Shown here: in pieces, positions 6,989 through 59,625 of the stretch
Position numbering within the stretch: position 1 is the first letter of the stretch
Layout: each line of letters opens with the position of its first letter
Source: Histomonas meleagridis 2922-C6/04-290x
Taxonomy: Eukaryota; Protista; Parabasalia
Assembly (NCBI GenBank): GCA_020184695.1
Contig: JAANOX010000266.1
Span: 1 to 64,000, forward strand
Length of the DNA stretch: 64,000 nt
Reading direction: 5' to 3'
The notes under the pieces: generated by a model
The model's input: the letters and a program-made list of their open reading frames with translations, nothing else
What the model was told of the DNA's origin: nothing
The model's database searches: none
Made by a program: the position numbers and the translations under genes

Positions 6989-7225
6989 ATGGAAAAGAAA
7001 CCCTTGTTATCATTTGATATTGCACTTGATGGGACAATGCAAAACATAAAAGGTGACATTGATGGGAAACTTCCTGACAAAACAGTTATGAATAGGTTGT
7101 TGTTCGCAGCAAATAAATTATTGACTAATGAAGAAGTATCCTCAATAACAATACACACAGATAAATATGTACTTAGAATATCAGCAGCAGGAGCCAATTT
7201 TTCATGCATTGTAACGAGATTGTAA
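6989..7225 (+). CDS. Small protein, possibly roadblock/LAMTOR-like
   Basis: 78-aa ORF from ATG 6989; beta-beta-helix-beta-beta-beta pattern (LSFDIALDG..KGD...RLLFAANKLL...SITIH..YVLRIS) loosely like LAMTOR4/5. Confidence 0.45.
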   Translation: MEKKPLLSFDIALDGTMQNIKGDIDGKLPDKTVMNRLLFAANKLLTNEEVSSITIHTDKYVLRISAAGANFSCIVTRL

Positions 7226-7538
7226 TAAAAATTTTTATGATTAATCCTTTTCTTGGACTTTCAATCGAACCTTATCAAGAGTGTACAATAATTTGCAAAT
7301 GAGGGTGTGCACAGTTTCCCAATGTATATAATTTTATTTATAATTAATAAATTAATGATAATTCATAAGGTAAAAATTTGATATTTTTTGCATAAATTAA
7401 AACAAATTCTCTTTGTGGATATTAGCTTTGTGTAACAGTTCCGTGAATACTAATAAATGTAAGAGTTGACTATTCTAAAAATTTTACAAAACAAAAAAGA
7501 CAAAAAGTGACGGTTTTAAAGAAACATTTTTCCAAAGA

Positions 7539-7988
7539 ATGGAAGCATTTAGCTCAGATTCTAGCGATCTTTCTGAATTCGAAGATTTCCACCCAGAGGA
7601 TTTTTCTGCAGAACTTGATAGACCTACACCAACAAGAGGTGGAATCAGATTACCTCCACCAAAAAAGAAATCAGTAGCTCCTCCACCCCCACCTCCTATT
7701 GAAGTTATTCCTCCAAGTATTGCCAAAACCGTGTTAGAAGCTGAAAAAGAAGAGGATCAAGTAATTTCTGTTGATTTTGACACATTCAGAGAAGAAGGCG
7801 AAGATCTTGCACAAAAGAATGCAATGATTAAAGATAAGTCACAATACAAAGGTGTAGGTTATCAAAGAGCTAAGTCACAACTAACATATCTTGCACAACT
7901 CGATCTTGAAACACGTGGAGCGTATGAACAGCAACTAAAAAACAGCACAAGAGCAAAAGTTGCATCTGCAAAACTATATGGATGGTGA
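7539..7988 (+). CDS. PRCC-family (proline-rich, C-terminal PRCC domain) protein
   Basis: Poly-Pro stretch plus C-terminus QRAKSQLTYLAQLD...KLYGW typical of the PRCC C-terminal domain. Confidence 0.75.
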   Translation: MEAFSSDSSDLSEFEDFHPEDFSAELDRPTPTRGGIRLPPPKKKSVAPPPPPPIEVIPPSIAKTVLEAEKEEDQVISVDFDTFREEGEDLAQKNAMIKDKSQYKGVGYQRAKSQLTYLAQLDLETRGAYEQQLKNSTRAKVASAKLYGW

Positions 7989-8091
7989 AAAAAAGCTTTT
8001 TTTAAATTTTGTTTATCGATAATCGACTTGTGATATGAAATTGATATATTTTTGAACGTTAAAGTCACAGGACCAAGAGCCAAAATTTTAC

Positions 8092-9516
8092 ATGAATTTC
8101 ATCGCCCAACTTGTTAATAATGATGGAACACCAACAGGCCCACAGATTAGTCTTCCTTCTACCACTTCTACAAAAGATTTAACAACTCTTGTAAACCAAT
8201 TTCTTGAAAATGAGGAACCTACACCATTCTCATTTTATGTAGACGAAGAACAAATTGTTGGGAATCTTGAAAACGTTACAAAAACAACATCAACAGAGAA
8301 AGTATTAAAGATTGTTTATCGACCAGAAGCAGTATTTGGCGTTCGTGCTGTTAGTTATTGCTCGGCAACACTTCCAGGACATTCACACACAATCTTATGC
8401 ATTGCTTTTTCCAATGACGGCACAGATTTGGCAACTGGTGGTGGCGATGGATCTGTAATTTTTTGGGATATCACAACACAATCAATGAGACAACGACTTC
8501 CAATTAAAGAAAATAATTGGATTCAATGTATTGAATGGCATCAAATGTGCAAAATTCTCGCAATTGCAGGTACAGATGGATATATCAGAATAATCGAAAA
8601 AAATCCAGAAACAGGAAACTTTTCACTCAAAAACGAATTCAAAGTTTCCAACTCACCGATTTATGCTATACAATGGGAACCATTTCATCTTCAAAACACA
8701 CAATATCCACGAATAGCTGCATCAACAAAAAATGGTGAAGTAGCTATTTGGTGTTCACAAACAGGAAGGAGGCTTATTGCTTTTTCTGGGCATTCTGGTT
8801 TTGTTATGGGACTTGCTTGGGGCGTTGATGGAATTCTTTATTCTTCATCTCATGACCGAACCCTCAAAGCATGGGACACAAAGACTGGCCAAGAGTTAGC
8901 GAAGTATAGTCCACGTAGTGGAGCTTGGAGAACTCTTGCTATCTCAACAGCATTTGTATTAAGAACAGGTCCATATGAACTTGGCCATATAAATGGTCCT
9001 GATCCCAAAGAAGAAGCTCTTAAAAGGATTGCTGCACATCGTGCGCAAAGCCCTATCGAGTACGTCGCTGTCGGCGGAGAAGATTTCACTGTTTCACTCC
9101 TCAGATATGAAAACGGTAATTTCATTGAAATTCAACGGTTAACGGGGCACACCAAAGCCGTTAACCATATTGTTTTTTCACCAAATGGTTATTGGTTAGC
9201 TACAGCTTCATTTGATAAGACAGTAAAATTATTCGATGGGAAATCGGGCAAATTTGTTTGCACACTTGGTAAGGGCCGAGGTCGACATACTGGTATGCAT
9301 TTAGGTCCCGTCTACAGACTTGCATGGTCAGCTGACTCTAGGAAACTAATAAGTGGAAGCTCAGACACTACATTAAAAGTATGGGACATCACAACACAAA
9401 AACTTCTCAGAGATTTACCAGGTCATGAAGATGAAGTTTATGGTGTAGATTGGTCACCAACCGGATCACCAGCTGCTTCTGGTGGCAAAGACAAACAAGT
9501 CCGACTTTGGAAGTAA
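8092..9516 (+). CDS. NLE1: Notchless homolog (Rsa4), NLE domain + WD40, 60S biogenesis
   Basis: N-terminal NLE domain (LVNQFLENEEPTPFSF, IVYRPEAVFGVRAV..CS.TLPGH), WD40 repeats, RLTGHTKAVNH..FSP.G, LPGHEDEVYGVDWSP. Confidence 0.95.
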   Translation: MNFIAQLVNNDGTPTGPQISLPSTTSTKDLTTLVNQFLENEEPTPFSFYVDEEQIVGNLENVTKTTSTEKVLKIVYRPEAVFGVRAVSYCSATLPGHSHTILCIAFSNDGTDLATGGGDGSVIFWDITTQSMRQRLPIKENNWIQCIEWHQMCKILAIAGTDGYIRIIEKNPETGNFSLKNEFKVSNSPIYAIQWEPFHLQNTQYPRIAASTKNGEVAIWCSQTGRRLIAFSGHSGFVMGLAWGVDGILYSSSHDRTLKAWDTKTGQELAKYSPRSGAWRTLAISTAFVLRTGPYELGHINGPDPKEEALKRIAAHRAQSPIEYVAVGGEDFTVSLLRYENGNFIEIQRLTGHTKAVNHIVFSPNGYWLATASFDKTVKLFDGKSGKFVCTLGKGRGRHTGMHLGPVYRLAWSADSRKLISGSSDTTLKVWDITTQKLLRDLPGHEDEVYGVDWSPTGSPAASGGKDKQVRLWK

Positions 9517-25879: not shown

Positions 25880-28300
25880 AATCGAAAAAGTAGAATTAAT
25901 TTGGTATTGTCATAATATTGAAAAATGGATTTGCAACATGTAACGACTTGGTTACTTGGTGTAATTGTTGGATAATATTATCAGTTAGAATATCTCTAAT
26001 AACATTTGAAATTTTGATTGTTATTACAAAATCTGGTTGGTTACACAAGTGAAAAAGAGATGACCAATAGCATCATGAAATAGAGCATGATTCATATTTT
26101 TGTTCCTCTTCTTTGGAGAGCATAATTTTTAATTCTGGTCATTGCTCTCATTTGGCCGATGAAAAACCACTCAATTTTACGTTGGATATTAACGGACGAA
26201 TATTTGGTTAGCTCGAACAAAAGTAAATTGAAGTTCTTCTTATCAAAAAGTAGACGTTATTGAAACTTTTTGAATTATAATTCAGTTGTTCAAAAATTAA
26301 CGCTCAAGAATGTCTTCTGCACAACTTGAAAAAAAAGAAAAAAAACTCAGGCATCCTGAATCCTCAATGAATAGTGCCAAAGTAGTTTTATGTAATTCCA
26401 TAAAAGATCTCCTTCGGGTATGATGAATGGTGCTCCAGGATTTGAAAGGAATTGAACGTATCGGATTTTTCGATTTTGTAAACCATGCAAATAAAACATG
26501 TTTTTCAATGCTTATTCAAATATTTTCATGTTTGTGAGAAAATATTTGCTCATTCAATTGTGTTTCAATAAAAATAATTTCGCCTAAAATATTCTATGGA
26601 AATAAAAAATGACATATACGATACAACAAAAATTTGAATGCTTTTGAAAATTCTTAATATTATGACGAGGAAATTGAATTGATTCAATTTTCAATCAACA
26701 ATTCGTATCGTTGCATTCATCATTAAACTTTGATATGTTTAAAAATCCGATGAATTTAATACAAAATAGTAAAAACATAATTTTGTTAAGATCCAGCACT
26801 CGATCGCATATGTTATACCGAAGTTAATTCATGTTCATATTAATATCAAATCATATAAAAAAATATTTACGCGAAAATTAGATGAATATTCGATGCAATA
26901 AATCAAATATGTATTTATTATCATAATGTTATTCGACTTGAATACGATATTCCATTTTTAATGAGATTATATGATACATTTTATATAAATTAGATATTAT
27001 AAGCCTATTCACGTATCGAAAATATATATTTTGATCAATACCATAATTAAAACACGGATCAAAATTGAGCCATTTAATGAATCATTAAATTTTCAATATA
27101 TAAATAATATATTCATTAACATGAACAATTATATTCTGAAAATAAGTATATAAGAATATGTCAATATTTACAATTTTTAATTGATAAGAATACTTTCGTC
27201 ACAATAAATGTTTTAAATTGGCAATAATAATATGTTTAATATAATAATCAACTTTATATAATAATATAATATACACATAATGATATATATATTTTGCATG
27301 TGATATATTGTATGATATAATAAAAATCAAACGATATTAATAGAAAATATAATCGGTTATTTACAACATTAATTTTATTATTTGAATATTAAAATACATA
27401 AATCGTTATAATGCTGAACGACTATATATAATTAATAAAATAAATAAAAATATATAGTTCGTGATGATATATTGGCTGGCGTATATTAATCATTGTGTTA
27501 ATCGTATTTTAATTTAAATATGATAATGGAATTGAGGTATTACAGAAATATGAGGTCATTAATTAAGTATCATATGAAAAATGTTTATTCATAATTAACT
27601 GGAAGTATAAATAATAACGACATTTTTCATGGATGAATTTTAATTTTGTTATAATCGCTCGGATTTTTGATTTTTATTCAGAAAAGCATCAAATTTTTAA
27701 ACATATCAAAGTTTAATGATGAATGCAACGATACGAATTGTTGATTGAAAATTGAATCAATTCAATTTCCTCGTCATAATATTAAGAATTTTCAAAAGCA
27801 TTCAAATTTTTGTTGTATCGTATATGTCATTTTTTATTTCCATAGAATATTTTAGGCGAAATTATTTTTATTGAAACACAATTGAATGAGCAAATATTTT
27901 CTCACAAACATGAAAATATTTGAATAAGCATTGAAAAACATGTTTTATTTGCATGGTTTACAAAATCGAAAAATCCGATACGTTCAATTCCTTTCAAATC
28001 CTGGAGCACCATTAATCATACCCCAAAAATCATCCAAATTGTTTGAAAAAGCCTTGTGATTAATTAAACAACTCTTTCCCCAAATGTTCACTCAAATAAC
28101 TTTAAAGAATGCTTTCATAAAGATGTTGTCATTTGAGATATCATAACAAATTGATTCTTTAATTGAGACGAGTTTATCATACTATTGAAGTTTGTTCCAC
28201 TCCATGCAAGAAAGAAAGTGACAAAATCTTTGATGGGGAAGAAATTGAGAAACAGCAGATAATTTTGGCAGTAATTTATTTCCATCAATCACACCATTGA
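25880..28300. repeat. Degenerate dispersed repeat (25880-26416 + 28024-28300) interrupted by a long-TIR element
   Basis: Both flanks are reverse-complement homologous to 55660-56640 (e.g. gtaacgacttggttacttggtgtaattg; caaaaatcatccaaattgtttgaaaaa). Confidence 0.85.
26417..28023. mobile_element. Non-autonomous 1.6-kb element with ~330-bp terminal inverted repeats (copy 1)
   Basis: 26417-26746 is a near-perfect reverse complement of 27693-28023; AT-rich interior has no credible ORF; no TSD found. Confidence 0.9.
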
Positions 28301-32531: not shown

Positions 32532-33437
32532 ATGAATTTTAATTTTGAAGCTGTCGAAGAAAATGAAAAACAGGAAATTGATCCTCTCATTGATGGAATA
32601 TCAAGTGATAATGAAGAAGATTCAATGAAATATAATGCAGATTTTATTATTAGTCAAGAAGATGATCATATGATTAGAACATTGACAAATTTCAAATGTC
32701 GAGAATTTTTAATACTTTTCCAAGTCATAGAACCTTATATGGAAAATGCTCATACAGGTGGAAGAAAATCAAAACTTTCAATTATAACAATGTTTTTAAT
32801 AGAATTATGCTTTTGTAAGCATGCTTTGAGTTTTGTTTTCCTTCAAATGCAATTTGGTTATGACAATTCCTATTTGGAGAGAATTGTCTTTCAAACAATC
32901 TCAATTTGTCATATGATTTTATTTAATTTTGCAGTTAGATAAATTTCACGAGAAGAAAACGAAAGAGATGGAATTTTATTTGAATATTTTCCTTTTGCTA
33001 CATGTGCTATTGATGCTTCTGTACAAGAAGTATCAAAATCAAACTTAGATTGGTATTCAGGAAAACATAAGAAACATTGTATCAAAATGCAAGCAGCTGT
33101 TGGTGCAGAAACACCTTTTAAGAAAACAAGAAACGGACTAACAGCACAACAACATAATCACAATGAAAATTTCAGTCATGATAGAGTCATTGTTGAAAGA
33201 TGGTTTGGTAGACATGAAAGTTTATGGAAAATCATGTTTTTAAAATTTTCCTTTAAATTAGATAGATACGAAATGAAGTATATATTTTGTAGTGCTTTAA
33301 CAAACTTTCATATTTCTTGCTCGAGATATAATCGAACAATTTCTACATTGAGAATTAATATCAGTATATTGTTCATTAAAAAAATATCGTTTTTCATTAA
33401 TTTGTATAAAACACTCATTTTCAATGACGACTATTGA
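32532..33437 (+). pseudogene. Decayed DDE_Tnp_4 (ISL2EU/PIF-Harbinger, IS5-like) transposase
   Basis: N-terminal HTH-like region (RTLTNF..GRKSKLS); in-frame TAA at 32940; AIDASVQ, WYSGKHKKHCIKMQ and HN..FSHDRVIVERWFGR motifs; central segment with the second Asp appears deleted. Confidence 0.8.
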
Positions 33438-33569
33438 ACATTTAGTTGTTAAAAAAGTAATTATCATTTTTGCTTGTCTAGTGCAAGGAGAAGGTAGGTT
33501 AATATCAATTCTATTGTAATGGTATACATCATATGAATTTATTGTGTAATCAATGGTTTCATTAAACAT
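33297..33569 (-). pseudogene. Virus-like cassette gene Z, copy A (3' truncated)
   Basis: MFNETIDYTINSYDVYHYNRIDINLPSP is homologous to MFNKIKDYTISSYDYAHYYRIYVNLPGP at 42060. Confidence 0.65.
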
Positions 33570-33620
33570 TTATATAATATAAAAATATTTCAGGAATTCT
33601 ACTTATCAAAACACAACTTT

Positions 33621-34420
33621 TTACAACACAACTGTCTTTCTATAATTAAACATGAATACTAATTGAATAATAAATCTACAATGAATTGGATATATAGGAT
33701 TCTTCCCATCAGAAGTAAATTTTATATTAAAAGTATATCCGTCAGAAGGAGCGTAATAAATAACAGTAGGTTTTTCATTAAAATCACCTTTGATACCAAT
33801 GAATTTTCTCTTACTATCACTAAAAATGCATGGAATTCTAAATATTCTCTATTCCAAACATTAGTAAAAGTTTTACTATTATAGAAGTTATTAAGTATAT
33901 CTTCATTGGTGGGATTCTGATTTATAAATATTAATAAATTATTTATGTTGGTATCAAATAAGTTATCAGTAGGATTAACAAATCTGTATTCATGATCACA
34001 ATTAATAGTAAGTTCTCCTGTTGTATTTATAATGATAATCAAATGTATAATTATTATCATTAAACGCAGCATCTCTTAAGAGAATTATCAATTGATTAAA
34101 TAAGTAATTACTTCTAATAAATTATTATGACTCATTATTTGAATACTAACTATAGTTTCTTTTTGTTCTTCATCTCCATTTTTTACAATACATTTTAATG
34201 CAATTACATGTGAAGTAGGAATGATTTCTAAACGTCTTATTCCAACTACTTTATTTTGACTACAGGAATCTAATTCACGTTGTGGATGACGAAACGTATA
34301 ACCATTATTTTTATTTACATTAGTTAAATCTCTTTCATATTCTTCAATATCTAAATTAGTATGATTTTCTTCTATAGGTAATTCTGATGCATGAGTAGTA
34401 AGTTGCTTTTCAGTTCTCAT
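33621..34420 (-). pseudogene. Virus-like cassette gene X, copy A (stop + frameshift)
   Basis: Homologous along its length to 38908-39705 (NLDIEEYERDLT, SQNKVVGIRRL, NVWN, APSDG.TFNIKFT.DGKNPIYP). Confidence 0.85.
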
Positions 34421-34437
34421 TTTAATTAGTATAAAAT

Positions 34438-34860
34438 ATGATTGAATCTAATAGAATTGAAACTATACTTAAATCTTTAATGAATAAAAATAGTGTAGTA
34501 TATCCTAATTATAGTAAGAATTCTGATACCTTATCTAATGGCATATGTTCATTAACAATTAATAGTGTAGATAAATCATTTATAATATTTACTTATGGAA
34601 GATGTCATTTAATAATTAATCCTCTAGATTCCAGTATCAAAGGTCTTATTTTAATAAACGATATTTTAGTAAGTGATATTATTACAGGATCTAATATTAT
34701 GAATAATGCTTATCTATCTTAAATGTTTAGTAATATTAATAATATATTAACTATATATGAAGAATTCATTAAAATCAATGAAGAAAATAATAACGTTAGT
34801 ATAAATGACATGTTATTGATAATGTTATTCATTAATGTAATGTATATTGTTATTCATTAG
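34438..34860 (+). pseudogene. Virus-like cassette gene Y, copy A (internal TAA at 34720-34722)
   Basis: Homologous to the minus-strand ORF at 38432-38868 (NGICSLTI, INPLD, INDILVSDIITGSNIMNNAYL); TAA aligns with CAA (Gln) in copy B. Confidence 0.75.
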
Positions 34861-35800
34861 TGTATTATATAATGTTATTAATATTGTTATTCATTAGTGT
34901 ATTGTATAATGTAATTAATATCGTTATACATAAATAAATATAACAATAAATGATCGATAATAAATAATGATAAATATAATGTTTAATAATAAATAATGAT
35001 GAATGATAAATATTTAAAATACATTATGATGGATAATAATGAATATATAAATGCATAAATTAGCATATAATGTTTTAATAATCATCAACTAAATTTTGAA
35101 TGCAATCTAATTGAGATTTAAAAATTTAATTTAATCAAATCAATAATAGCGCATATAAAAGTGCCAATGCATTTCACATTCTCATTATCAACTTCATTAA
35201 ATAATGCTATTTAGATAAAATTAAAAAAAATAAAAAAAATCACCAATTTGTAGTATAAATAATTATGAATCAATGTTCATATCACTTTCAATATGAATAA
35301 AACAATTTACATATTTCGACAAATATTTGTGTTTGAATGCATACTTGGTCAACTATTTCATGTAAACGTTTTTCAATTAAAATCACAGAGATGCCACTTT
35401 TGAAGTCCAGATATATCATACAAAAAGTCGAAACATGAAAAAAATTAATAATAAGTTATTATATTTATCAACATAGAATCAATTTTTTCTAATAGCATTT
35501 AAGATTTATATGTTATAATAGATGGTGAATTTAACCATATGTATAAATTTCAAAAATATAAATAAAATTTCTAATGCTCAATAATTTTATCAAAATTAGG
35601 AATTATATGAAATTAATAGTGCATTTACGTCTTTTCTTGCATAATTTATCACAGTTTGATATAAAAATTATAAATTTAATTTTTGAATTTTTTGAAATTT
35701 TAAAAAAATTGTTTTTTCGGCGGTTGTCATCACATCGCATTCAAAAAGTGGAGAATTGTGGGAATAACCGTCAAAAAGTGGGTACAAAAAAGGAACAGTT

Positions 35801-35960
35801 AGCACATATAAGTGAGAATAAACATATATAATAAAAAATTAATAAGAATAAATGAGAATCAGCACATATAAGTGAGAATGAACATAAGACAATGAAATGA
35901 ACACATATAAGTGAGAACAAATACAGTTAGTGAAAATAAGCACATATAAGTGAGAATTAA
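35801..35960 (+). repeat. Four direct copies of the 16-bp motif CACATATAAGTGAGAA with variable spacers
   Basis: Copies start at 35803, 35863, 35902, 35941 (spacing 60/39/39). Confidence 0.9.
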
Positions 35961-36481
35961 CATAAAACAATAGAAATCAATAAATATTACAACATTCATT
36001 CACACCATCTTTGCCAAATTTAATTTTTATTCAAAAAAAAACATGACGAAAATTGTAAATTATCCATAATGAAATCGAATTTAAATATTTTCTCATATAA
36101 CAAATTGAGAGCCAATTTTTGAATGGAAATCACATCTAATTCAAATTCTCCATTATAATTGAATCAGGTATTCACTTTTTGAAAAGGTAGTATTCAAATT
36201 TTTCACGGTTGTAGGATAGTATCGGAAATTCTCAAAAAACATTTGAATTAATGAGTAAACTATTCGATTCAAAATTTTCATTCTCCTGATATAGATTATA
36301 CATCATATCAAAATATGATTTTCATTTATATTTGATGAATTAATATAAATATTCATGAAATTGATTTATTATAAGATGACAGATTAACGTCCATTGGAAC
36401 TTTTTGATTCATTTACATCACGACTTTTTGTGATATTTACATTATTGACTTTTCGTTATGTTAATTCTCTGATCATCTGTA

Positions 36482-38431: not shown

Positions 38432-38868
38432 TTATTTTGTAGATGTGTCACTTTTCGGATATTTACTTTTGTAAAACAAGCCAAACAAATAGCAAACAGC
38501 TGTAACATTATTATTTTCTTCATTAATTTTAACAAATTCTTCATATAGAGTCAATACTTTATCAATATCACTAAACATTTGAATTAAATAAGCATTATTC
38601 ATAATATTTGATCCTGTAATAATATCACTTACTAATATATCATTTATTAAAACAAGATTTTTAATGCTGTTATCTAAAGGATTAATTATTATACGATTTT
38701 TTCCATAAGTATATATAAATGATTTATCTATACTATCTATCGTTAATGAACATATACCATTGCTAATAGTATCTGCTGTTTTGCTATGATTAGAATATAC
38801 AACACTATTTTTAATTTAATAATAATTTTTACTATATTTTCTAATATTTCGTATTGTTGAAGTGTCAT
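38432..38868 (-). pseudogene. Virus-like cassette gene Y, copy B (5' frameshift)
   Basis: Open from ~38815 to TAA at 38432; homologous to 34438-34860. Confidence 0.7.
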
Positions 38869-38907
38869 TTTATTATATAATAAATGAATATTTTTATTGT
38901 TAATAAA

Positions 38908-39705
38908 ATGTTAAGTGAAAGACAACTTGATTATCGAGTGTCTGAATTATCCATAGAAGAAAATTATACTAATTTAGATATAGAAGAATATGAAAGAGAT
39001 TTAACGTATGTAAATAGAAATGTTGGTTATAATACATATCGTTACCCACAACGTTGGTTAGAGTCTCCTAGTCAGAATAAAGTAGTTGGAATAAGAAGAC
39101 TTGATATAATACCTACTTCTTACGTAATTTCATTGAAATGTGTTATTAAAGATGGAACAGAAAACCCACCAGAAACTATTGTTAATATTCAAATTATGAG
39201 TCATAATACTTTATTAGAAATAATTATATATTTAATCAATTCTCTTAATGAAGCGTTTACTAATGATCCCGGTTTTGAATACTTATATAATGAAAAAGGA
39301 GAACTTATGATTAATTGTGATTATGAATTTAAGTTTGTTGATCCTATTAATGGCGCATATGATATAAATATAAATAATTTCTTAATATTCTCAAATCAAG
39401 ATACTACAAACGATAATTATAGTATATTAAATAATTTCTTTAATGGTAAATCCTTTACTAATGTTTGGAATAAAGTATATTTTAAATTCCGTGCATCATT
39501 CAGTGATAGTAAAAGAAGATTTATTGGTGTTAAAGGTGATTTTTATGAAACAATAAATGTTGTATATAATGCTCCTTCTGACGGATTTACTTTTAATATA
39601 AAATTTACATTTGATGGAAAGAATCCTATATATCCTATTTATTGTAGATTTATCATACAATTAGTATTCATGTATAATTATAAGAAAACAATAGTATTAA
39701 AATGA
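38908..39705 (+). CDS. Virus-like cassette gene X, copy B; beta-rich, possibly jelly-roll (minor capsid-like)
   Basis: Intact ORF; ATG 38908 matches the copy A start; C-terminal FTFNIKFTFDGKNPIYPIYCRFIIQLVF resembles the C-terminal strands of Polinton minor capsid proteins (inference). Confidence 0.6.
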   Translation: MLSERQLDYRVSELSIEENYTNLDIEEYERDLTYVNRNVGYNTYRYPQRWLESPSQNKVVGIRRLDIIPTSYVISLKCVIKDGTENPPETIVNIQIMSHNTLLEIIIYLINSLNEAFTNDPGFEYLYNEKGELMINCDYEFKFVDPINGAYDININNFLIFSNQDTTNDNYSILNNFFNGKSFTNVWNKVYFKFRASFSDSKRRFIGVKGDFYETINVVYNAPSDGFTFNIKFTFDGKNPIYPIYCRFIIQLVFMYNYKKTIVLK

Positions 39706-39760
39706 ACAAAAATAATATAAGCGTCATATAATGACAGCGGGTCTAAAGACCTTAATATTT

Positions 39761-41969
39761 TTATGATTCGATTAATGTTTTTATAGGATCTTCACTCTCT
39801 GAACATATATTTTTATATTTATTATTAACATGATATATATATTCATTATCAATATTTTTGGCAATCCAATTATCAGCTGATTTAATATATATTTCTTTAA
39901 ATATATGTTCTATCTTAAACTGACCTAATTTATCGCCAATATATCCTAAGTTTTGTAATTTGATATAATTATCTTCAGATATCAATAAAGAATCAACTTT
40001 TGAATAATATACTTTAGATATTAAACTTTTAATATGATTCATTTTATCATTAAAATTATTTAATACTGATCTTGCAAATTGTGGATAAGTAAAGTGTTCT
40101 CTATAAGGTTTTATTGTATATACATAGTTATCTTCATCATATTTAATAACATAAGGTGCAAATTCTTCAATATATTTATCAACATTAGTCTTTAACTTTT
40201 TATTAAAATTAGGTGGTTTTCTAATAGATGTTCCCCAACAACTATTCATCATAAATTTTAATGTAGTAGCCAATTTATCATTACTAGACTCATTAGCTTT
40301 TATTCTTAAGTTATATAATACTTTTATAAGTTGCTTTATTTTATTATTTTCTCCTTTAAAAGCACCGTTATCATCTGGTTTACCTGTAGGTATTGATATT
40401 ACAGATGACATATAAGCACCGTTTAAATCTATATAATAATATTTCCCAGTTAAATGTATTTGTTGCCATATAATTTTAGGAAATATACATTCATTACGTA
40501 TTTTATTAGCAATATCATTTGATATTTCATATACACCATCAAAACACCCATATTCATACATTATTTTTAACATTAAATCAGTATATCTATAGTATTTGAC
40601 AACATCTATTTTATGAGATGAATTTTTAGTTATATTTACATCTATTAAATGTTGTAATTCATTAATTCTGTATTTTATTTCTTTATCATCATCTAATTCA
40701 TAACCAAATAACTTTTTGCCGTGTTTCATTCTTTTAACAAATTTAGGTATAAACTTTTTATCAGCCACGGCTACTAGCCTGTAGCTGTTATATGGTTTAT
40801 TCACTGTTTTATAACTCCAGCATAATTTATTATAAGTATTAATATCCATAGGTTTTGATAAATTACTTTGTTCCATAGTATCAATTAAATAGTATATAGA
40901 TATATATTTATCAGTATATTCATCCGAAGTATTCAAGCCAATAAATTGGCGTTCTATAGTATTATTTTTACTATAATTTTTGATACTGTCAATAGATATA
41001 TTAACACTTTCATTTAACATATAATGATTATATATAATTATTAATTTTATAGTTTTATCATATTGTTTTTCCATAATCTCTGTGAGTAAAATCTTTATTA
41101 GCCATATATCTAATATTAATAAGAATTTTTTTAATAAATTAGATATATCTTTTTAATTGTTATAAAGGAACTGTTCTAGTATTTATAAAAGATCTTAACA
41201 TATTAATTTCGTTATCTGTAAATAAATTGCTAGCAATAAATGATTGTATCAAACAAGACTCATTGATATGTTCATTGTTGACGTTATTGAAAATACCATA
41301 TTTTGTAAGATCTATATTAGTAGTATTAATATAAGGGAAGAATCCTGGATTAACTCTCTTACCGTACTTTAAATCTTTAAATTCAAATTTTATAGATTTA
41401 ATATTTTTAAAGGTTTCTAATGCTAAAGTGTTACTGTCACTAATATTATCTTTTTCATTAATAATATCATATAAGAAGTTAACTGTATTCATATTTCCAT
41501 GATAGTAAGATATATTATTATCATCACTAATTACAGTCATTCTAATATCTTTATTTATCTTAGCACCAACTGCCTTTATAGCATACATTAATGCATATAA
41601 TATATCTTCTTTATTACTAAGGTCTTTGTTGTAAGTAAAATCTTTCTGAGTCATTAATTTTTTAATTAATTCTTTAGTTATATTGTTAATGGATTCATTC
41701 TGTTTTACAGGTTTCTCTACATGTTCATCTTCAGATAATGCTATATTATAATAATCATCAAATGGATTTTTATATATATATTTACTACGTTTATTGTGTT
41801 TTATTTTATATTGCAATTGATTAACTGATAAACTAACATTTTGATTACTCATTTCATCATATACCTTATAAATGGTTTTAGTATTAATATGTACAAAATT
41901 GTCTGGTAGTGTATAACCATACTTATTGAACAGTTCTATCATCTGTTTTGTTGTTAGCTTCCTTGGCAA
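39761..41969 (-). pseudogene. Compact family-B (protein-primed-type) DNA polymerase, decayed, with putative N-terminal OTU-like domain
   Basis: Motif A YYIDLNGAYMSSV, motif B KFMMNSCWG, motif C YYSKVDSLLI, then GDKLGQFKIE; the two ORFs join via two in-frame TAA (41160, ~41140) and one frameshift (~41070); start codon is TTG. Confidence 0.8.
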
Positions 41970-42059
41970 TATATTTATATAAAAATAAAAAAATAAATTT
42001 TATATAAAAAAATATATTTACAAAGAAAATATATAACACAGATGTTTTATATGGTTAAA

Positions 42060-42164
42060 ATGTTTAATAAAATTAAAGATTATACTATATCATCATATGA
42101 TTATGCACATTATTATAGAATATATGTAAACCTACCTGGACCACCTAATTTAAATATTGCTTGA
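42060..42164 (+). pseudogene. Virus-like cassette gene Z, copy B (34-codon remnant), divergent from PolB
   Basis: MFNKIKDYTISSYDYAHYYRIYVNLPGPPNLNIA* homologous to 33297-33569. Confidence 0.7.
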
Positions 42165-43725
42165 AAATCTACTTTTGTCTTTCTTCTAATTAATTTTTTG
42201 CTTGTTCCTCTCTTTCTTTCGAATTTTTATGATCGATATCTAATCACATCAAATTACAAATAATATCATTGATAATGATGAAATTTATATTTTATATCAT
42301 ATTTTATTACAATAAAATTTTATTTACTAAAAATATTCTTCTTGTAATTTTTATATACATACCTTTTTGCAATTAGGCTCAGCAAATGGGCTTCAATAAC
42401 GGAAAATACAATGATTTTGCGTACTTAATTTTTGTTGGAGTAATATGAAATTTAATATTTCCCCAACGGTTAAAAGTGGGCAATTTTTAATAACCGATAT
42501 CATAGGTGGTTACACTTATAAAAAAATGCAAATATCTCGTCAAAAATAGTTGTCGAAATTTTTGGTCTTAATATAAAAAAAATATCTATACTGTAGAAAT
42601 AATAAATTTAAATTATCAAATAAATTTATTATTAAATTTCTTAAAAATATAAGCTTTAAATCTTATAAAAAAAATGATTTCACTAATTTTTAACATAATA
42701 ATAATGCAATTTGTCATATTTTTCGGAGGAGAATATGGTGAACTTAGTCACGCCCAATGGGAATGTGTAGTTATAAAGATATAAAATTGTTATGTTGAAC
42801 AAACAAAAATACCGAATTACTTACCGACACAATGTGTCATTTTTGTGATTTTTTTCAATTTATTCGATGTCTTTGATCTATAGTTAGAGTATCTTTTAAA
42901 ATCTGATGACAAATTTATAGATATTTTTCAAAATAGTTTCCTATATACATTGCATCATCTATTATATATTATGTTTTATATATTATACGTTGCATGTTAT
43001 AAAGTGTATTAGATAACCAAAAACAAAGACTTCTGAACATTTCAGTTAATACATGTCGACTTTTTGAGTGTAAAATATACTTTTTGAATGCCGGAGCGGT
43101 TATTGCAGTTATAATGAAATTTGCTACGAATTTATATGAAAATTTAAAAAATTGACGAAATCGACCACATAAGATATAAACCGGCTTTTTCTAAAATAAT
43201 CTTATTATAGTAATTTGCCTACATAGAAATACTCTTTAGAGAAAATTGAACGCCTTTTAGATTAAATTAAACGACTTTTAGATAATTTTTTATACCATTA
43301 ATTATTATTCATGAATGAAGAAGTCCAAAAATCCAATACCAGAAAAGTACTTTTCTGAAGTCCAAGCGATAAATGTATTGAAAATATTCTATGAGTTATT
43401 TGATGCAGAAATTTCAATTATAGGTCATGCAGACAAAAAAACGTCATTTTCATAATATCTTTAAAATGTAGCAAAATTTTGATATTCCGAATATATGTTA
43501 TTAATATATTACTTATTATTTTTAAATATGGTATTTTTTTTTTAGATATTATGATAAAATTAAAAAAAATTCATTTGAATTGGAAGATTTTATATTTTTA
43601 GTATGAACGATGAGTTTCGTACAAAAAATAAATATCTGGAAAGTTATTTAATCATATGGTTAAATTTTGATATTATTGGATTGATAGTTTTTGTAAAAAG
43701 TTTGAATTAATCATGGATTATGACG

Positions 43726-45298
43726 GATTTATTGGACCGTTAATTGAATGGAGCTCCCGAATTTTGAAGGAATTGAACGTATCGGATTTTTCGATGTCGT
43801 AAACCATGCAAATAAAACATGTTTTTCAATGCTTATTCAATTATTTTCATGTTTGTAAAAAAATATTTGCTCATTCAATTGTGTTTCAATAAAAATATTT
43901 TCGCATAAAATATTCTATTAAAATAAAAAATGACATACGATACAAAAATTCGAATTTTTTTGAAAATTCTTAATATTATGACGAGGAAATTGAATTGATT
44001 CAATTTTCAATCAACAATTGGTATCGTTGCATTCATCAATTGATATGTTTTGAAATTCGATGCTAGTCTGCAATAAAAATCGATAATTTGTGCGATTATA
44101 ACGAAATCAAAATTTATTAATGAAAAATGTCGTTATTATTTATACGACCAGTTAATTATGAATAAACATTTTTCAGATGATACTTATATAATGACCTCAT
44201 ATTTATGTAATCCCTCTTTTCCATTTACATATATAAATTAAAATACGATTAACACAATGATTAATATAATACAGCCAATATATCATCACAAACTATATAT
44301 TTTTATGTATTTTATTAATTATATATAGTTGTTCAGCATTATAACGATTTATGTATTTTAATTTTCGAATAATAAAATTCATGTTGTAAATAACCGATTA
44401 TATTTTCTATTAATATCGTTTGATTTTCATTATATAATACAATATATCACATGCAAAATATATATATCATCATGTGAATATTATATTATTATATAAAGTT
44501 GAATATTCTATTAAACATATTATTATTGCCAATTTAAAACATTTATTGTGACGAAAATATTCTTATCAATTAAAAATTGTAAATATTGACATATTATTTT
44601 CATTATATTCAGAAAATAATTGTTCATGTTAATGAATATATTATTCATATATTGAAAATTTAACGATTCATTAAATGGCTCAATTTTGATCCGTGTTTTA
44701 ATTATGGTATTGATCAAAATTTATTTATTTTCGATACGTAAATAGGTTTATGATATCTAATTTATATAAAATGTATCATATAATCTCATTAAAAATGGAA
44801 TATCGTATTCAAGTCGAATAACATTATGACGATGAATACATATTTGATTTATTGCATCGAATATTCATCTAATTTTCGCGTAAATATTTTTTTATATGAT
44901 TTGATATTAATATGAACATGAATTAACTTCGGTATAACATATGCGATCAGATGCTGGATCTTCACCGAATTACGTTTTTACTATTTCGTATTAAATTCGT
45001 CAAATTTTATTCCATATCAAAATTTAATGATTAATGCAACGATACGGATTGTTGATTGAAAATTGAATCAATTCAATTTCCTCGTCATAATATTAAGAAT
45101 TTTCAAATTCGAATTTTTGTATCGTATGTCATTTTTTATTTTAATAGAATATTTTATGCGAAATTATTTTTATTGAAACACAATTGAATGATAATTGAAA
45201 AACATGTTTTATTTGTATGGTTTACGACATCGAAAAATCCGATACGTTCAATTCCTTCAAAATTCGGGAGCTCCATTCAATTAACGGTCCAATAAATC
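43726..45298. mobile_element. Non-autonomous long-TIR element, copy 2 (inverted relative to copy 1)
   Basis: TIRs ~43726-44050 / ~45013-45298; interior is reverse-complement homologous to 26750-27690; no TSD found. Confidence 0.9.
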
Positions 45299-46511
45299 AG
45301 ACAACCGTCAAAAATCAATTCAAAATCAAAAACGATAGAATATTGAAATTTTGTTACGCATCGAACAACGACCACAATTGTATATAATGTGTATTGTTAT
45401 CAAACTAAGATTCCTTTTTTGTAATCCCAAATAAATAAATTTGTGATGTACAAAATGTAGTATTAAAAAATCATATTTTGGCATCGAGGATTAATAATAT
45501 GAACAGAATAATCTAATTTTTCGAGAACCGCATGATTTGACTAGGTCTGTCAATCATATCACTATAAAAAAAAATAAAAATAATCTCATCTATATTATAT
45601 TTTTTGAGAAATCGTATTTAGACGTCGTAACGGTCGCCTGTTCTCAAAAATGATTACTTCATTCATAGAAATTTTAAGAAAAATTCCTATTATTGTCATT
45701 TAACACCACAGTGTTATGCTGTGATATTAATGATATTAATAAAGATCAAATAAATATAATTCTATGTTAATCTTCATCATAATAAATAGTAATTGGGCCA
45801 GTGTAAGCAGCCGAAACTAATGTGATTATATAACGTTTCTAAAATGATAGATTGCTTCTTTCAGAGCCACCTTTGTTTGTAATGAAAAGATTTGAATAAA
45901 TATCAGTGTGTGTATTTGAGGAAAAAGTAATAATTTGATAATATTTACCATCATTCAATTTCCCTTCTATCGTCACTTATCGTTGCCTCTATCGTTCAAC
46001 ATAAACCATGCAAAAGTCGATTTCTGTCACTTTTGATAATGAAAGAATAAATTTATCTTGTGCTAATCAAGATATAATTCTAAGTTCTTTATTAATCATA
46101 AATGTATATATTATATATCCATAATATCAAAATCGTAGAATGATCGCTATATACGAATTGCTGAAAACGGAAGTCAATTTTATATTCATGTATTAGAAGA
46201 TTTGATGAAGATAGATATTTTGATAGAAGATATGCAAACAAACATAGGCAAAAAAAGTTGTGAATATCATTGAAAATAAATTTTTTATTTATCTCTAAAT
46301 GTAAATTAATAAAATTATTTAAAGCTTTAATCAATAAAGATCAATATTATCACTGATTTCGGAAACAAGGGAAAATCAATAAATTATGCAATTTTCTCAA
46401 ATATTTATTTTTTTATGCATATTGTAATAAAGACAAAATTCTAATGATTTACACATGACTAAATAATACTAACGGTCTTCCTTGGGAGTGTATACAATAT
46501 TTTTTATTTTT

Positions 46512-47028: not shown

Positions 47029-48611
47029 ATGATGTTTGCTCTTTTATTTTGCAATCTTATAATTCCATCTTTTGGATTTTACTATAATAATACAAAAATA
47101 CTTGCAATAAGAACAGACGAAGACTTTACAACTTCAAAAATATAAGAATACAACAAAAGGCTTAATAATTCAAGATGGAATCACATCAATACCATCACAA
47201 GCATTTAGAGCTTGGCCAAAGCTATCTTGGGTTTCCATTGAGGAATCAGTATTGTTTATTGGTGATAGGGCATTTTTAGAATGTTCCAATTTATCAATTG
47301 TTACCATTAATAGAAGTGTACATACAATATCATATGGTGCATTTTATAGATGTTCTAAATTGTCTGAAATTATTTTTGGTGACAATCTGGTTAAAATTGG
47401 CCATCATTCATTTGCTGAATGTTCATCACTTAAAGATGTTAAGTTACCAAAATCAGTTTCTTCGATTGAAGAATATGCATTTTCTGAGTGTGCTAAATTA
47501 GCAAATATCACTTTGGGAGAAAATTTAACCAAAATTAATTTGGGTGTATTTAATCAATGTTCATCACTTGAAAGCATTAAATTACCAAATTCAATAACCT
47601 TAATCGAAGATTATGGATTTTCTTCTTGTTCTAAATTAAAAGAAATTACTATTGGAGGAAATTTAACTAAAATTGGCGATTATGCATTTTCTTATTGTAA
47701 CGTACTTTTAAGGTTTACATTCCCAAATTCGCTTTCTACAATTGGAAATTATGCATTTAATTATTGTCCTAAATTATCAGAAGCTATTTTTTGGAGAAAA
47801 ACTTAACTACAATAGGTAGATATGCATTTTTCTAATTGTAAAATCGCTTAAAAATATTACATTACCAAATTCGATAAATACAATTGAAGATTTTACATTT
47901 TCTTATTGTGATCAATTATCAGATGTTAAATTTGGAAACAATTTAACTATGATTGGCGATAGTGCATTCCTTCTTTGTATTTCTCTCAAAAAAATCGAAA
48001 CACCAGATTCAGTAACTTTAATTGGAACAATGGCATTTGGATTTTGTTCTAATTTATCAGTACTTATTCTTTGTGAAAATTTAGCTTCAATTGGATTTAA
48101 AGCATTTTGTAATTGCACTTGTCTAACATGTGTTTATTATTGTGGCAACACAGAACCTAATGTTGATAACACAGCATTCGATTTTTGTTCTGTAGGATGT
48201 GTGATGACATTAAATATATATAATTCGTCAAAATTTGGTAAACTTAATGTTTCAGTTGGATCAAATATAAGTAATTGTAATCCATTTCCAACAAACTCAT
48301 ATACAAAATCAAGTACATTAACAAATTCACAAACAACAACAATAACAAACACAAATATATACACACAATCAACCACAATTACACCACCAAAAACATTTTC
48401 AGAATCATATATAAGATCTATCACATTATCTCATTCATTCTCAAAATCAAGTACATCATCAAAGTCATTATCATCAAACTCTAATTCGAAAACTATGGCA
48501 ATTGTTGCTGTTTGTGTAAGTGTTTCTTCTATTGTAATTTTAATAGTTATTGTAGCAGCAATTTTCATTATTATACGTAGAAGTAAAAGCTATAACAATG
48601 AAGTTATTTAA
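47029..48611 (+). pseudogene. BspA-like (TpLRR/LRR_5) surface protein with Thr/Ser stalk and C-terminal TM, frameshifted in this sequence
   Basis: Repeats such as IGDRAFLECSNLSIVTI and IGDYAFSYCNVLLRFTFP; hydrophobic N-terminus; TM AIVAVCVSVSSIVILIVIVAAIFIII; one +1 shift at ~47130 and four at 47787-47843. Confidence 0.85.
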
Positions 48612-52165: not shown

Positions 52166-54115
52166 ATGATTTTTGCATGTATATTATTATCAATGCATGC
52201 TGTTGGGCATGTTTCTTATACATCTGAAGATTTATGGTCAATTGACATTATAGGAAAGAACAAAACAAAAAGTCTTCTTATTAATAATTATACTGGTGAT
52301 AGATATGATGAAATTGTTGATACAATAATAAAATCTACTGCATCATGGCAGATGTCACCTTTAGAAATCATTCTTACCATGACTCCAGAGCAACATATGA
52401 ATCTTACTGGTTTAGATCAAAATGTAAGCTCATCGATAGCTTATGTTTTTTGGGGAACTTATCTCAAGGGTGCATATAATGATTCATGTAACTATTTCCA
52501 TAGACTTGATGATACATTTTTTTAGGTTATTTTTCTTGTCTCTAGAAATTCATTCGGTACAGGTATTTCATGGCTTCAAGTTGGTCATCCTTATAATGAG
52601 TTTCCTGGTCAAATTAAAAATCAAACTTACTTTAAGACAAGGGATGAGAACCAATGAAACAGAAGAACGTGATGTCCGTAAAAGAGTTAATGAAATATTT
52701 ACCACAGGTAATCTTACAGGATATGGACGTGAAAATGATCTTCATACAGATTATGAAAAATCAGTTGCAATTTGGTGGTGGATTAAAGAAAATGTTGAAT
52801 ATGGTTTTTCTAAAAGGATGGAAAATTCAGCATATGGTGGAATTATATTGGGCAAAGCTGTAGATCATGGCTATTCTGCTATGTCTGGTATTTTGTTACA
52901 ACGAGCAGGAGTTGAAGTGCGTTGCTTAATGGGATTGTTAGCAAAGAAAAAACGATTCCATGCATGGAATTGGCTTCATATTGGGGAAGAATGGTTTGCT
53001 TACGATAGTACTTCAAGTAATGCAGGGAATTTTTTAATGGGAATTAATACAACTAATCATTTGAGTCAATACAAGTATTCTGATGGTGAATATTGGGATT
53101 TTCCTGTTTCCACTAGTAATTATAATTATAAGTTTAATAGCTTTAGTTTTCCTAAAAATGCACCATTGTTATATCAGAAAGAAGATACAGACTCAGGTTT
53201 AATCGGAAGAAATCTTAAATGGACATTAAAGAATGGTCTTCTTACTATTAAAGGAAGAGGACCAATGAGAAATTTCGAAAATGCAACACAAGTTCCATGG
53301 AAAAACTTCTTTTATAAAATTCTAAAACTAAAGATAGAAGAAACAGTTACAACGATTGGAGATTATGCATTTTATAATATAGACAAAATTAAGTATCAAA
53401 ATTATAAAGATAAATTAGGATTCATTCAATCAATTGGCCAAAAAGCATTTTCTGATTATAATGATCATGTTAAAACACAAGTATCATATAAAATTATTAA
53501 TTTAACATTTTTAGATGAAAATGAAAAAGAAAATTACAAAGCACAAATTGTAAATGCAAGTACACTAGATAAAATCAATGAAATATTACTAAAAGCTGAA
53601 AATAAATCAAAGGAAAACGAAAATACACAAAAAACATCAGCAAAAGATACAATCAAAAAATTGCCTTACCTTAAAAGCGATTCAGTTAAAGATTTTGAAG
53701 AAGAAATCAATAAAGCAAAAGATAAAGAATCAATTAAAGAAGTTGTTACAAAAGCACAATCAAAGAATAAAGAGCTAAAAGTAGTTTTCGAAAAGAGAGA
53801 AACAGTAAAAGAAGAAATCAAAAAAAGTTAGATAAATTGGGCGATATGCAAAAAGATTACATCGAAAAATTAGACAAAGCACACAATGAACAGGAATTTG
53901 ACCAAATATTGCAAGATGCTAAAACAAAAAATGAAGAACGTCAAGAAGAAGAAAATGCTGCTCAAGAAAACAAAACAAATACAATTGTTATGTCTGTAAC
54001 AGTTTCTGTTTCTATAATTGTTGTTTTAGTGGCAGTAGTCATTCTTGTTCTTGTTATTCGAAAACAAAGATATCAATCTGTTCATAAAAGTAATGAGCAA
54101 TCAAGTAAAATTTAA
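52166..54115 (+). pseudogene. Mosaic surface protein: transglutaminase-like domain + BspA-type cap/LRR + three GA-module-like repeats + TM; several frameshifts
   Basis: DYEKSVAIWWWIKENVEY..SAYGGIILGKAVDHGYS..HAWNW..WFAYDST; GRNLKWTLKNGLLTIKGRGPM..VPW..VTTIGDYAFYN; INLTFLDENEKENYKAQIVNA, IKKLPYLKSD..EEEINKA; TM VMSVTVSVSIIVVLVAVVILVLVI. Confidence 0.75.
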
Positions 54116-58800: not shown

Positions 58801-59625
58801 GATGAATGCAACGATACGAATCGTTGATTGAAAATTGAATTAATTCAATTTCCCTTGTCATAATATTAAGAATTTTTATACTTGGAATTGAGTTTGAACT
58901 TCGATTTTTTCATTTAAACTCTTAATTCAAATTAACTCGAAAAGTTTTCCACTCATTTCTTCCGATAGACACCTTAGAATAATTTATCTTCAAATAAAAA
59001 AAATATTTTGAATACTATTTTTTCAAAAAATCACGCATAATTGAAAGGCATTCATATTTCATCCACTTTTTCAATTAAAAACTAAAAATTAAAAATAATA
59101 AATATTATGCTATATAATTGTGTTAAAAGGTTTTTTAGGGTAGATTGATCAGTATTATTGATTGTGCATATAACTCTATATTTAAATAAAATTCTATAAA
59201 GAGGATTGTTGGTTGACTCCGTCCTTTTCGAATTATCACCTGTTTAGAGAAGAAGGGCAAAACATTATAAGATTTTTCGGGATCCTATACTGAAGATCAT
59301 TTAGTGCTTGATACAGAATTTCGATCTGTTTGCTAATGATGCTAATTTTTCCCACTGGGATAATGAAAACGGGTGTGATGAATGGTGCTCCCACATTTGA
59401 AAGGAATTGAACATATCGGATTTTGTAGACCATGCAAATATAACATGTTTGTGAGAAAATATTTGCTCATTCAATTGTGTTTCAATAAAAATAATTTGGC
59501 TTAAAATATTCCATGGAAATAGAAAATGACATATACGATACAACAAAAATCTGAATGCTTTCGAAAATTCTTTTTAATCATCAAATATTGATATGTTTTA
59601 AAATTTGATCAATTTAATACAAAAT
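58801..59625. mobile_element. Two fragments (58801-58876, 59371-59625) of the long-TIR family TIR, in opposite orientations
   Basis: gatgaatgcaacgatacgaa..tcataatattaagaatttt and gggtgtgatgaatggtgctcc..gacatatacgatacaacaaaaat match the TIR at 26417/27693. Confidence 0.8.

What the first reader, a model, noticed from the sequence alone, without database searches (positions are those of the whole stretch)
38432..42164. Small virus-like four-gene element (Y, X, PolB, Z) with no integrase, packaging ATPase or recognisable major capsid
Seen in sequence: a compact cassette Y(-) X(+) PolB(-) Z(+) with 40-90 bp intergenic gaps. The polymerase carries B-family motifs A/B/C. Established: Polintons/Mavericks of parabasalids are ~15-20 kb and pair a protein-primed PolB with rve integrase, ATPase, protease and capsids. 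Inference: this ~3.7-kb unit may be a minimal or satellite Polinton-related virus or plasmid. X (and possibly Z) look beta-rich and jelly-roll-like. It could also be a deletion remnant of a larger element.
Basis: partly seen in the sequence, partly recalled or inferred. Interest (0 to 1): 0.85.

Follow-up and report, generated by a model that had tools for sequence, protein, structure and literature searches.

The report
Decayed fragment of a Maverick-like virus
The "four-gene mini-virus" is a broken-off, partly decayed piece of a much larger (16-20 kb) Maverick/Polinton-like virus that once inserted into this parabasalid protist's genome; such relics are common in these organisms, so it is ordinary.

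Summary
The cassette is real but is not a minimal element. Only X (273 aa) is an intact gene.

- **PolB:** it is a true family-B polymerase by fold, and by homology to proteins that carry PF03175. No Pfam model hits it directly. Against intact 710-830 aa relatives it carries 2 in-frame stops and 1 frameshift.
- **Y:** the tail of an N-terminal remnant (about 100 of about 1,200 aa) of a large gene.
- **Z:** the first ~30 aa of a ~250 aa gene.
- **Second copy:** an inverted, more decayed partial copy lies at 33345-34827, with no PolB between X' and Z'.
- **Missing parts:** no integrase, ATPase, helicase or capsid-candidate gene of the family occurs anywhere in the 64 kb. There are no terminal inverted repeats.

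Intact relatives of X, PolB, Z and the large gene sit together on 12-17 kb contigs, most labelled human gut metagenome. Those contigs also carry an rve-like integrase, a D5-like helicase and an A32-type packaging ATPase.

X weakly resembles penton (minor capsid) proteins. The order X-PolB-Z was seen in no other locus.

The host is a parabasalid; its best named protein hit is Tritrichomonas foetus at 50% identity. Genomes of this group are known to be crowded with divergent Maverick-Polintons.

Verdict: an endogenous viral fragment, a new member of a known kind, of low to moderate interest.

The parts
38504..38812 (-). Remnant of the N-terminal part (about residues 29-131) of the family's large gene, which is ~1,200 aa in L020 and L021.
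   Evidence: tblastn of the L007, L008 and L009 gene products gives 62-65% identity. The homology to the left copy ends sharply at 38503.
38884..39705 (+). X, the only intact gene (273 aa). It is a putative penton-like minor capsid protein. The likely true start is the second Met, as in the homologues.
   Evidence: 15 homologues of 265-283 aa, E 1e-37 to 4e-83, aligned in A2 with conserved ends and a variable middle. AF2 pLDDT is 63.5. BFVD Foldseek hits are marginal: Bodo saltans virus protein E 8e-4, mimivirid 'putative minor capsid proteins', mavirus minor capsid E 0.075. PDB gave nothing significant.
39761..41969 (-). Family-B DNA polymerase pseudogene with 2 in-frame stops and 1 frameshift relative to the intact 733-aa relative P0001. 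The polymerase-motif residues are retained.
   Evidence: Fold. Link to PF03175-bearing proteins. No direct Pfam hit.
41970..42034 (-). Upstream (promoter-side) region of PolB, conserved with the closest relative. Together with the CDS it forms a cleanly bounded gene cassette between X and Z.
   Evidence: blastn of window 42034..39759 against L001 646-2902 gives 82% identity. The homology stops at the stop codon and ~53 bp upstream of the start.
42042..42164 (+). Z, a remnant of the first ~30 residues of a 250-264-aa gene of unknown function (homology 42045-42155).
   Evidence: tblastn to L003 13477-14271, L007 2732- and L009 1518-. The full-length family has no Pfam or PDB match.
33345..33584 (-). 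Left (inverted) copy: Z' remnant, the first ~75-87 residues.
33624..34435 (-). Left copy: X' pseudogene (3 in-frame stops, 1 frameshift). It lies ~40 bp from Z' with no PolB in between.
   Evidence: Against X, dN is 0.226 and dS 0.580.
34453..34827 (+). Left copy: remnant of the large gene's N-terminus (about residues 8-136, 1 in-frame stop). It ends at the same point of the gene as the right copy.
33087..33437 (+). Neighbour, not part of the element: a remnant of a DDE_Tnp_4 (PIF/Harbinger-type) transposase that abuts the outer end of the left copy.
   Evidence: Pfam PF13359, E 5e-7.

Best explanation
Window 38504-42161 is a non-functional endogenous fragment of a Polinton/Maverick-like double-stranded DNA virus of parabasalids. 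So is the inverted partial copy at 33345-34827.

The parent viruses are 16-20 kb elements. They encode an rve-type integrase, a D5-like primase-helicase, a very divergent compact family-B polymerase, an A32-type packaging ATPase, a penton-like protein (X), a ~540-aa conserved protein (a capsid candidate, untested), Z and a ~1,200-aa protein.

What is shown:
- The right-hand fragment keeps one whole gene (X), a polymerase gene with three disabling breaks, and stubs of two neighbouring genes.
- It has no integrase, no packaging or major capsid gene, and no terminal repeats.

What is inferred:
- It can neither replicate, nor move, nor make particles on its own.
- The PolB cassette lies exactly in the X-Z intergenic space. 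This most likely reflects a gene-order variant of the parent virus lineage, since gene order varies widely in the family, rather than a deletion that happened in the host.
- X is intact most likely because it is short and the decay is mild. At PolB's rate of 3 breaks per 2.2 kb, about 1 break would be expected in X.
For: 1. Y and Z are truncated remnants of much longer genes.
2. PolB carries 2 stops and 1 frameshift against intact relatives of 710-830 aa.
3. X, PolB, Z and the large gene co-occur on contigs L011, L020, L021, L034 and L036 (9-17 kb, labelled human gut metagenome). These also carry the A32 ATPase family (scanned on L003: PF04665, 27.6 bits against a cut-off of 22.8), an integrase family (scanned on L003: rve, E 1.5e-4) and a D5-like helicase (scanned on L003: DUF5906, E 9e-20).
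4. ORFs of all 79 related loci match the window only at 33345-34827 and 38504-42161.
5. No inverted repeats join the two ends.
6. The neighbourhood is a repeat and transposon graveyard, with a DDE_Tnp_4 remnant, tandem repeats and a foldback repeat family.
7. The host is a parabasalid. Published work reports that Maverick-Polintons make up about a third of the T. vaginalis and T. foetus genomes, with very divergent capsid genes (PMC10120064; 10.64898/2026.06.19.733378).
8. The PolB fold is family B, and distant relatives carry PF03175.
Against: - X is fully intact and well conserved, which would also fit a gene still in use.
- Both window copies end at the same residue (~131-136) of the large gene. 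That is unexpected for two independent random truncations.
- The PolB cassette has clean boundaries, which could suggest a designed compact unit.
- Stops and frameshifts in endogenous-virus regions can be assembly artefacts (PMC10120064), so the three PolB breaks are not proven real.
- The rest of the host genome could not be searched.
Confidence: 0.85

Rival explanations
1. One reading: a self-sufficient minimal or satellite virus or plasmid of four genes, replicated by its own protein-primed PolB and perhaps coated by X.
For: Compact layout with short gaps. PolB keeps its polymerase-motif residues. X is intact and capsid-like. The closest PolB relative sits on a 3.6-kb contig, L001.
Against: L001 carries the standard neighbours of the large elements, not X or Z. 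Y and Z are stubs of long genes. PolB has three breaks. There are no terminal repeats. X-PolB adjacency occurs in none of the 13 X-bearing related loci: L007-L009, L011, L020, L021, L023, L034, L036, L049, L050, L064 and L080. IMG/VR holds no relatives.
Confidence: 0.03
2. A non-autonomous deletion derivative (a 'mini-Maverick') that was copied within the genome with the help of full-length elements. The two window copies would be members of that derivative family.
For: Two copies in 5 kb share exactly the same inner boundary in the large gene.
Against: The copies are only 77% identical (dS 0.58) and differ by presence or absence of PolB. Their outer ends differ (Z stub ~30 aa against ~75-87 aa). 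They lack terminal repeats. The left copy's outer end abuts a transposase remnant.
Confidence: 0.07
3. X has been kept by the host (exapted) while the rest of the insertion decays.
For: X is the only unbroken gene. Its neighbours and its paralogue X' are broken. Divergence from relatives shows dN/dS of 0.26-0.39.
Against: At the observed decay rate an unbroken 0.8-kb gene is expected by chance about one time in three. The low dN/dS is explained by divergence while still viral. There are no expression data.
Confidence: 0.08
4. Assembly artefact: a collapsed or chimeric consensus of several element copies, giving false breaks and false junctions.
For: Published warning that such regions assemble badly and acquire false stops and frameshifts (PMC10120064).
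Against: The two copies are diverged and embedded in unique and repeat sequence within a 64-kb contiguous stretch that contains ordinary host genes. The boundaries are sharp, not mosaic.
Confidence: 0.07

Closest known systems
Maverick/Polinton elements of parabasalids (Trichomonas vaginalis, Tritrichomonas foetus; the 'Metamonada group')
   Same: Parabasalid host. The relatives are 16-20 kb elements with a family-B polymerase linked to PF03175 proteins, an rve-like integrase, an A32-type ATPase and very divergent virion genes. Decayed copies sit in repeat-rich DNA.
   Different: The window holds only a 3.7-kb fragment plus a 1.5-kb fragment. PolB here is compact (710-830 aa against about 1,000-1,200 aa in the PF03175-positive relatives), is invisible to Pfam, and has no conserved acidic residues in the exonuclease-like region. 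No KilA, protease or recognisable capsid domain was detected by Pfam in the relatives scanned. No direct comparison with T. vaginalis sequences was possible here.
Polinton-like viruses (PLVs) and virophages
   Same: Small dsDNA viruses of protists with an A32-type ATPase, a penton and a major capsid gene. X gives marginal structural matches to the mavirus and TVS1 minor capsid proteins.
   Different: PLVs usually lack the rve integrase plus PolB pair. No relatives were found in IMG/VR viral contigs. The capsid identity is untested.
Linear plasmids and small viruses with protein-primed PolB (fungal or plant mitochondrial plasmids, phi29-like phages, bidnaviruses)
   Different: There are no terminal inverted repeats, no terminal-protein evidence and no RNA polymerase. 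The setting is nuclear and eukaryotic, and the relatives are 16-20 kb.

Membership tests
Polinton/Maverick (self-synthesising virus-like elements) | Family-B DNA polymerase of the protein-primed (PF03175) type | tested here: met
   The fold is family B. There is no direct Pfam hit. Profile hits at E 1e-40 to 1e-58 reach 1,000-1,190-aa proteins that carry PF03175, and hhalign gives 99.4% over the N-terminal region. Protein priming itself is not testable here. The gene is broken in the window.
Polinton/Maverick (self-synthesising virus-like elements) | Retrovirus-like (rve) integrase | tested here: not met
   None in the 64-kb window. Relatives have a 369-422-aa gene with a sub-threshold rve match, E 1.5e-4, 22.4 bits against a cut-off of 32.6.
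Polinton/Maverick (self-synthesising virus-like elements) | A32/FtsK-type packaging ATPase | tested here: not met
   Absent from the window. Present in relatives: PF04665, 27.6 bits against a cut-off of 22.8, found in 37 loci.
Polinton/Maverick (self-synthesising virus-like elements) | Double jelly-roll major capsid protein | tested here: inconclusive
   No candidate in the window. The relatives' conserved ~540-aa protein has no Pfam or PDB-sequence match.
Polinton/Maverick (self-synthesising virus-like elements) | Penton (single jelly-roll minor capsid) protein | tested here: inconclusive
   The X model has pLDDT 63.5. BFVD hits to minor capsid or penton proteins run from E 8e-4 to 0.1. PDB hits are all E > 0.2, with the mavirus penton at 0.5. 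The profile has no PDB-sequence hit.
Polinton/Maverick (self-synthesising virus-like elements) | Adenain/Ulp1-like maturation protease | tested here: not met
   No protease domain was found in the window's ORFs or in the proteins of the relatives that were scanned.
Polinton/Maverick (self-synthesising virus-like elements) | Terminal inverted repeats and target-site duplication; length 15-20 kb | tested here: not met
   No inverted repeat links 38.5 kb with 42.1 kb. The fragments are 3.7 and 1.5 kb. The related contigs are incomplete and show no contig-end repeats.
   One of the four genes is intact. The ends are undefined. The X-PolB-Z order is absent from every related locus that carries X. 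No protein identical to X is on record in the public collection.

The most novel reading that the evidence does not exclude
The intact relatives, which are 16-20 kb elements on at least 69 metagenome contigs (most labelled human gut, some at 20-100x coverage), may be an undescribed and currently active lineage of Polinton-like viruses of gut parabasalids. On this reading they would have a compact polymerase that is invisible to Pfam, lacks conserved exonuclease residues and has a short motif A-B spacer. The window fragment would then be a fossil of that lineage in a related host.
Probability: 0.35. Interest if true: 0.55.

Novelty: new member of a known kind. Interest (0 to 1): 0.3.

Why it matters
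The locus matters little as a "minimal virus", because it is a relic.

Its use is as a pointer. It ties a parabasalid genome to a family of virus-like elements that recur in human-gut metagenomes and that standard domain models miss. PolB, the capsid candidates, Z and the large gene all lack Pfam hits.

That family could help in two ways. It could mark the presence of gut parabasalids in metagenomes. It could also help place the still ungrouped metamonad Maverick-Polintons among eukaryotic dsDNA viruses.

Tried and rejected
Searches that found nothing:
- Organelle or plasmid origin was rejected: there are no tRNA or rRNA genes, and the flanks hold nuclear-type eukaryotic genes.
- Pfam and PHROGs on X, Y, Z and both PolB parts gave nothing.
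- The PDB sequence search with the C-terminal part of PolB gave nothing. The profile gave only a weak match (E 0.5) to E. coli Pol II at motif B.
- IMG/VR scans with the X and PolB profiles found no relatives.
- The JGI metagenome scan with the X profile found nothing. The PolB profile then found 69 loci.
- An exact look-up of X in public assemblies found no record, so the source assembly was not identified.
No paper cites the assembly GCA_028748565.
- The Z family and the 540-aa family have no PDB sequence hit.

Ideas rejected:
- X related to the 415-aa gene of L003, or Z related to X: hhalign was negative.
- The large neighbouring gene as the major capsid protein: it is ~1,200 aa in L020 and L021, and the ~539-568-aa family is a K/E-rich coiled coil.
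- The two window copies as the long terminal inverted repeats of one element: the 3.7 kb between them matches no element gene, and the arms are only 77% identical.

The scripts printed alignment ranges that bracket the breaks of PolB, X' and the left large-gene remnant. This report gives counts only.
Full report
**Setting.** The window is AT-rich (26.7% G+C) and has no tRNA or Rfam match. Its first 25 kb hold long, intron-free ORFs for ordinary eukaryotic proteins: PP2A-B56, a Notchless-like WD40 protein, a HECT ligase and LRR proteins. BspA-type LRR genes lie further on. The best named relative of the B56 protein is Tritrichomonas foetus TRFO_25385 at 50% identity. From 25 kb onward the window is gene-poor and rich in repeats.

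**What is at 38432-42164.** On the + strand lies X (38884-39705, 273 aa). On the - strand a polymerase gene spans 39761-41969. The short ORFs Y (38432-38602, -) and Z (42042-42164, +) flank them. None of the five ORFs has a meaningful Pfam or PHROGs match.

**PolB is real but broken.**
- A search of 5.8 billion proteins with the C-terminal part found 92 relatives, most of them 700-765 aa. The closest, P0001, is 733 aa and 82% identical.
- Both window ORFs align end to end with such single proteins.
- Relative to P0001 the window gene has two in-frame stops and one frameshift.
- An AlphaFold2 model of P0001 from a 38-sequence alignment has mean pLDDT 84.8. Its best 50 PDB matches are all family-B DNA polymerases (Pol alpha, Tgo/KOD, E. 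coli Pol II, phi29), with E 6e-7 to 3e-5 and probability 1.0.
- The family profile hits 1,955 cluster representatives. Seven of nine distant ones examined, 1,065-1,190 aa long, carry PF03175 (DNA_pol_B_2) at E 1e-25 to 1e-44. hhalign links the N-terminal regions at 99.4% probability.
- The window copy keeps the residues aligned with the invariant motif A, B, C and KxY-region columns.
- No acidic column is conserved across the exonuclease-like region, about residues 290-470 of P0001. I infer that proofreading may be lost in this family.

**Y and Z are stubs.**
- The - strand from 38812 to 38504 encodes residues ~29-131 of a gene whose products are at least 575 aa on contig L007 and 1,203-1,234 aa on L020 and L021. 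Y is simply the end of that frame, running 24 codons into unrelated DNA.
- Z matches only the first ~30 residues of a 250-264-aa protein family.

**A second copy.** An inverted partial copy lies at 33345-34827.
- It carries Z' (~75-87 residues), X' (three stops, one frameshift) and a large-gene stub (one stop). It is 77% identical in DNA, and X' and Z' are ~40 bp apart with no PolB between them.
- Both copies end at the same point of the large gene, residues ~131-136, and the boundary is sharp.
- The left copy's outer end abuts a DDE_Tnp_4 transposase remnant. Its inner end abuts tandem repeats.

**Relatives show the full element.**
- Exact look-ups and a metagenome scan gave 80 related loci, most of them labelled human gut metagenome.
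- On L034, L036, L020, L021 and L011 the gene order is: integrase(-), 179, 215, 539 (coiled coil), 540 (conserved), 106(-), 194, PolB (784-830), 209, 78, 150(-), A32 ATPase, Z, X(-), large gene (~1,200), D5-like helicase.
- Pfam supports the ATPase (PF04665, above its cut-off) and the helicase (DUF5906, E 9e-20). It supports the integrase only weakly (rve, E 1.5e-4, below its cut-off).
- Gene order differs among L003, L034, L051 and L056, so the family is fluid in gene order.
- ORFs from all 79 loci held at that point match the window only at the two fragments. No integrase, ATPase, helicase or 540-aa gene lies anywhere in the 64 kb.
- No inverted repeat joins the fragment ends.
- X is followed by Z, never by PolB, in every X-bearing locus long enough to show its downstream neighbour. 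This includes L080, which carries the closest X at 58% identity.
- DNA homology with L001 covers exactly the PolB coding region plus ~53 bp upstream. PolB therefore sits as a clean cassette in the X-Z spacer. I read this as a gene-order variant of the parent virus, which is an inference.

**X.** Fifteen homologues of 265-283 aa share strongly conserved ends and a variable middle.
- The AF2 model is mediocre, with pLDDT 63.5. It is confident only for the central alpha/beta part.
- PDB Foldseek gave nothing significant.
- Against predicted viral structures the best hits are a Bodo saltans virus protein (E 8e-4, probability 0.99) and mimivirid "putative minor capsid proteins". The minor capsid proteins of mavirus and a Tetraselmis PLV, and adomavirus LO5, follow at E 0.06-0.1.
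- This enrichment, together with the position next to the packaging ATPase in L056, makes a penton-like role plausible, at about 50%.

**Age and selection.**
- dN/dS is 0.17 for window PolB against L001, 0.26 for X against L009, and 0.39 for X against X'.
- Most divergence therefore arose under purifying selection, that is, while the lineages were still functional viruses.
- With three breaks in 2.2 kb of PolB, about one would be expected in X. Its intactness is therefore not evidence of function.

**Comparison with what is known.**
- Published work reports that Maverick-Polintons make up roughly a third of the T. vaginalis and T. foetus genomes. It also reports that parabasalid capsid genes form a separate "Metamonada" group, and that stops and frameshifts in such regions may be assembly artefacts (PMC10120064).
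- A 2026 preprint still cannot place metamonad Maverick-Polintons because of their divergent morphogenetic genes (10.64898/2026.06.19.733378).
- The window fragment fits that picture as a decayed member.
- As a Polinton it fails the tests for integrase, ATPase, capsid, terminal repeats and length. Its intact relatives meet the polymerase and ATPase tests and weakly meet the integrase test.

**Unexplained.** I cannot say why both window copies stop at the same residue of the large gene while differing by the presence of PolB and in the length of the Z stub. One possibility is duplication of an already truncated fragment followed by long divergence. Another is a recombination-prone point. In L056 the N-terminal module is a separate 337-aa gene. 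I could not decide between these.

**Verdict.** The fragment is a new member of a known kind, with interest 0.3.

Noticed in passing
window 43721-45303; also 26424-28013 and 58801-59572: A ~1.6-kb repeat family with ~320-bp terminal inverted arms (85-99% complementary) and no long ORF. The copy at 26.7-28.0 kb is 92% identical. It looks like a foldback or non-autonomous DNA transposon.
   Followed up: partly
window 33087-33437 (+), perhaps with 32532-32942: A remnant of a DDE_Tnp_4 (PIF/Harbinger-type) transposase (Pfam E 5e-7) lies directly beside the left virus fragment. Its insertion may have cut off the Z' gene.
   Followed up: partly
window 34810-34931 and 35773-35983: Two short tandem-repeat arrays (alternating 12/25-nt and 39-60-nt start-to-start spacings) start right at the inner boundary of the left fragment.
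   Followed up: no
alignment A1 (PolB family), P0001 residues ~290-470 and 512-569: The polymerase family has no conserved acidic residues in its exonuclease-like region, and only ~57 residues separate motifs A and B. From memory, phi29 has about 130. This suggests loss of proofreading and a missing or tiny TPR1 insertion, which is unusual for protein-primed polymerases.
   Followed up: partly
L036 1-1932 versus 5043-8311; L020 6283-8121 and L036 15193-16892: One metagenome contig carries an inverted second copy of the 539/540-aa gene pair upstream of the integrase. Two contigs carry two tandem X paralogues. So rearranged and duplicated modules are common in the family.
   Followed up: no
loci L011-L079: At least 69 metagenome contigs, most labelled human gut, carry this polymerase family. 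Some have assembler coverage of 20-104x. No relative is present in IMG/VR. The host in the human gut is unknown; a parabasalid such as Dientamoeba is only a guess.
   Followed up: partly
window 47252-48611 and 52443-53831: BspA-type LRR gene pieces, and a protein that combines a transglutaminase core, BspA LRR and a GA module. These are typical surface-protein families of parabasalids, and here some are apparently fragmented.
   Followed up: no
window 316-25077: All fourteen long host ORFs in the first 25 kb lie on the + strand with short spacers. This contrasts sharply with the repeat-rich, gene-poor remainder of the window.
   Followed up: no
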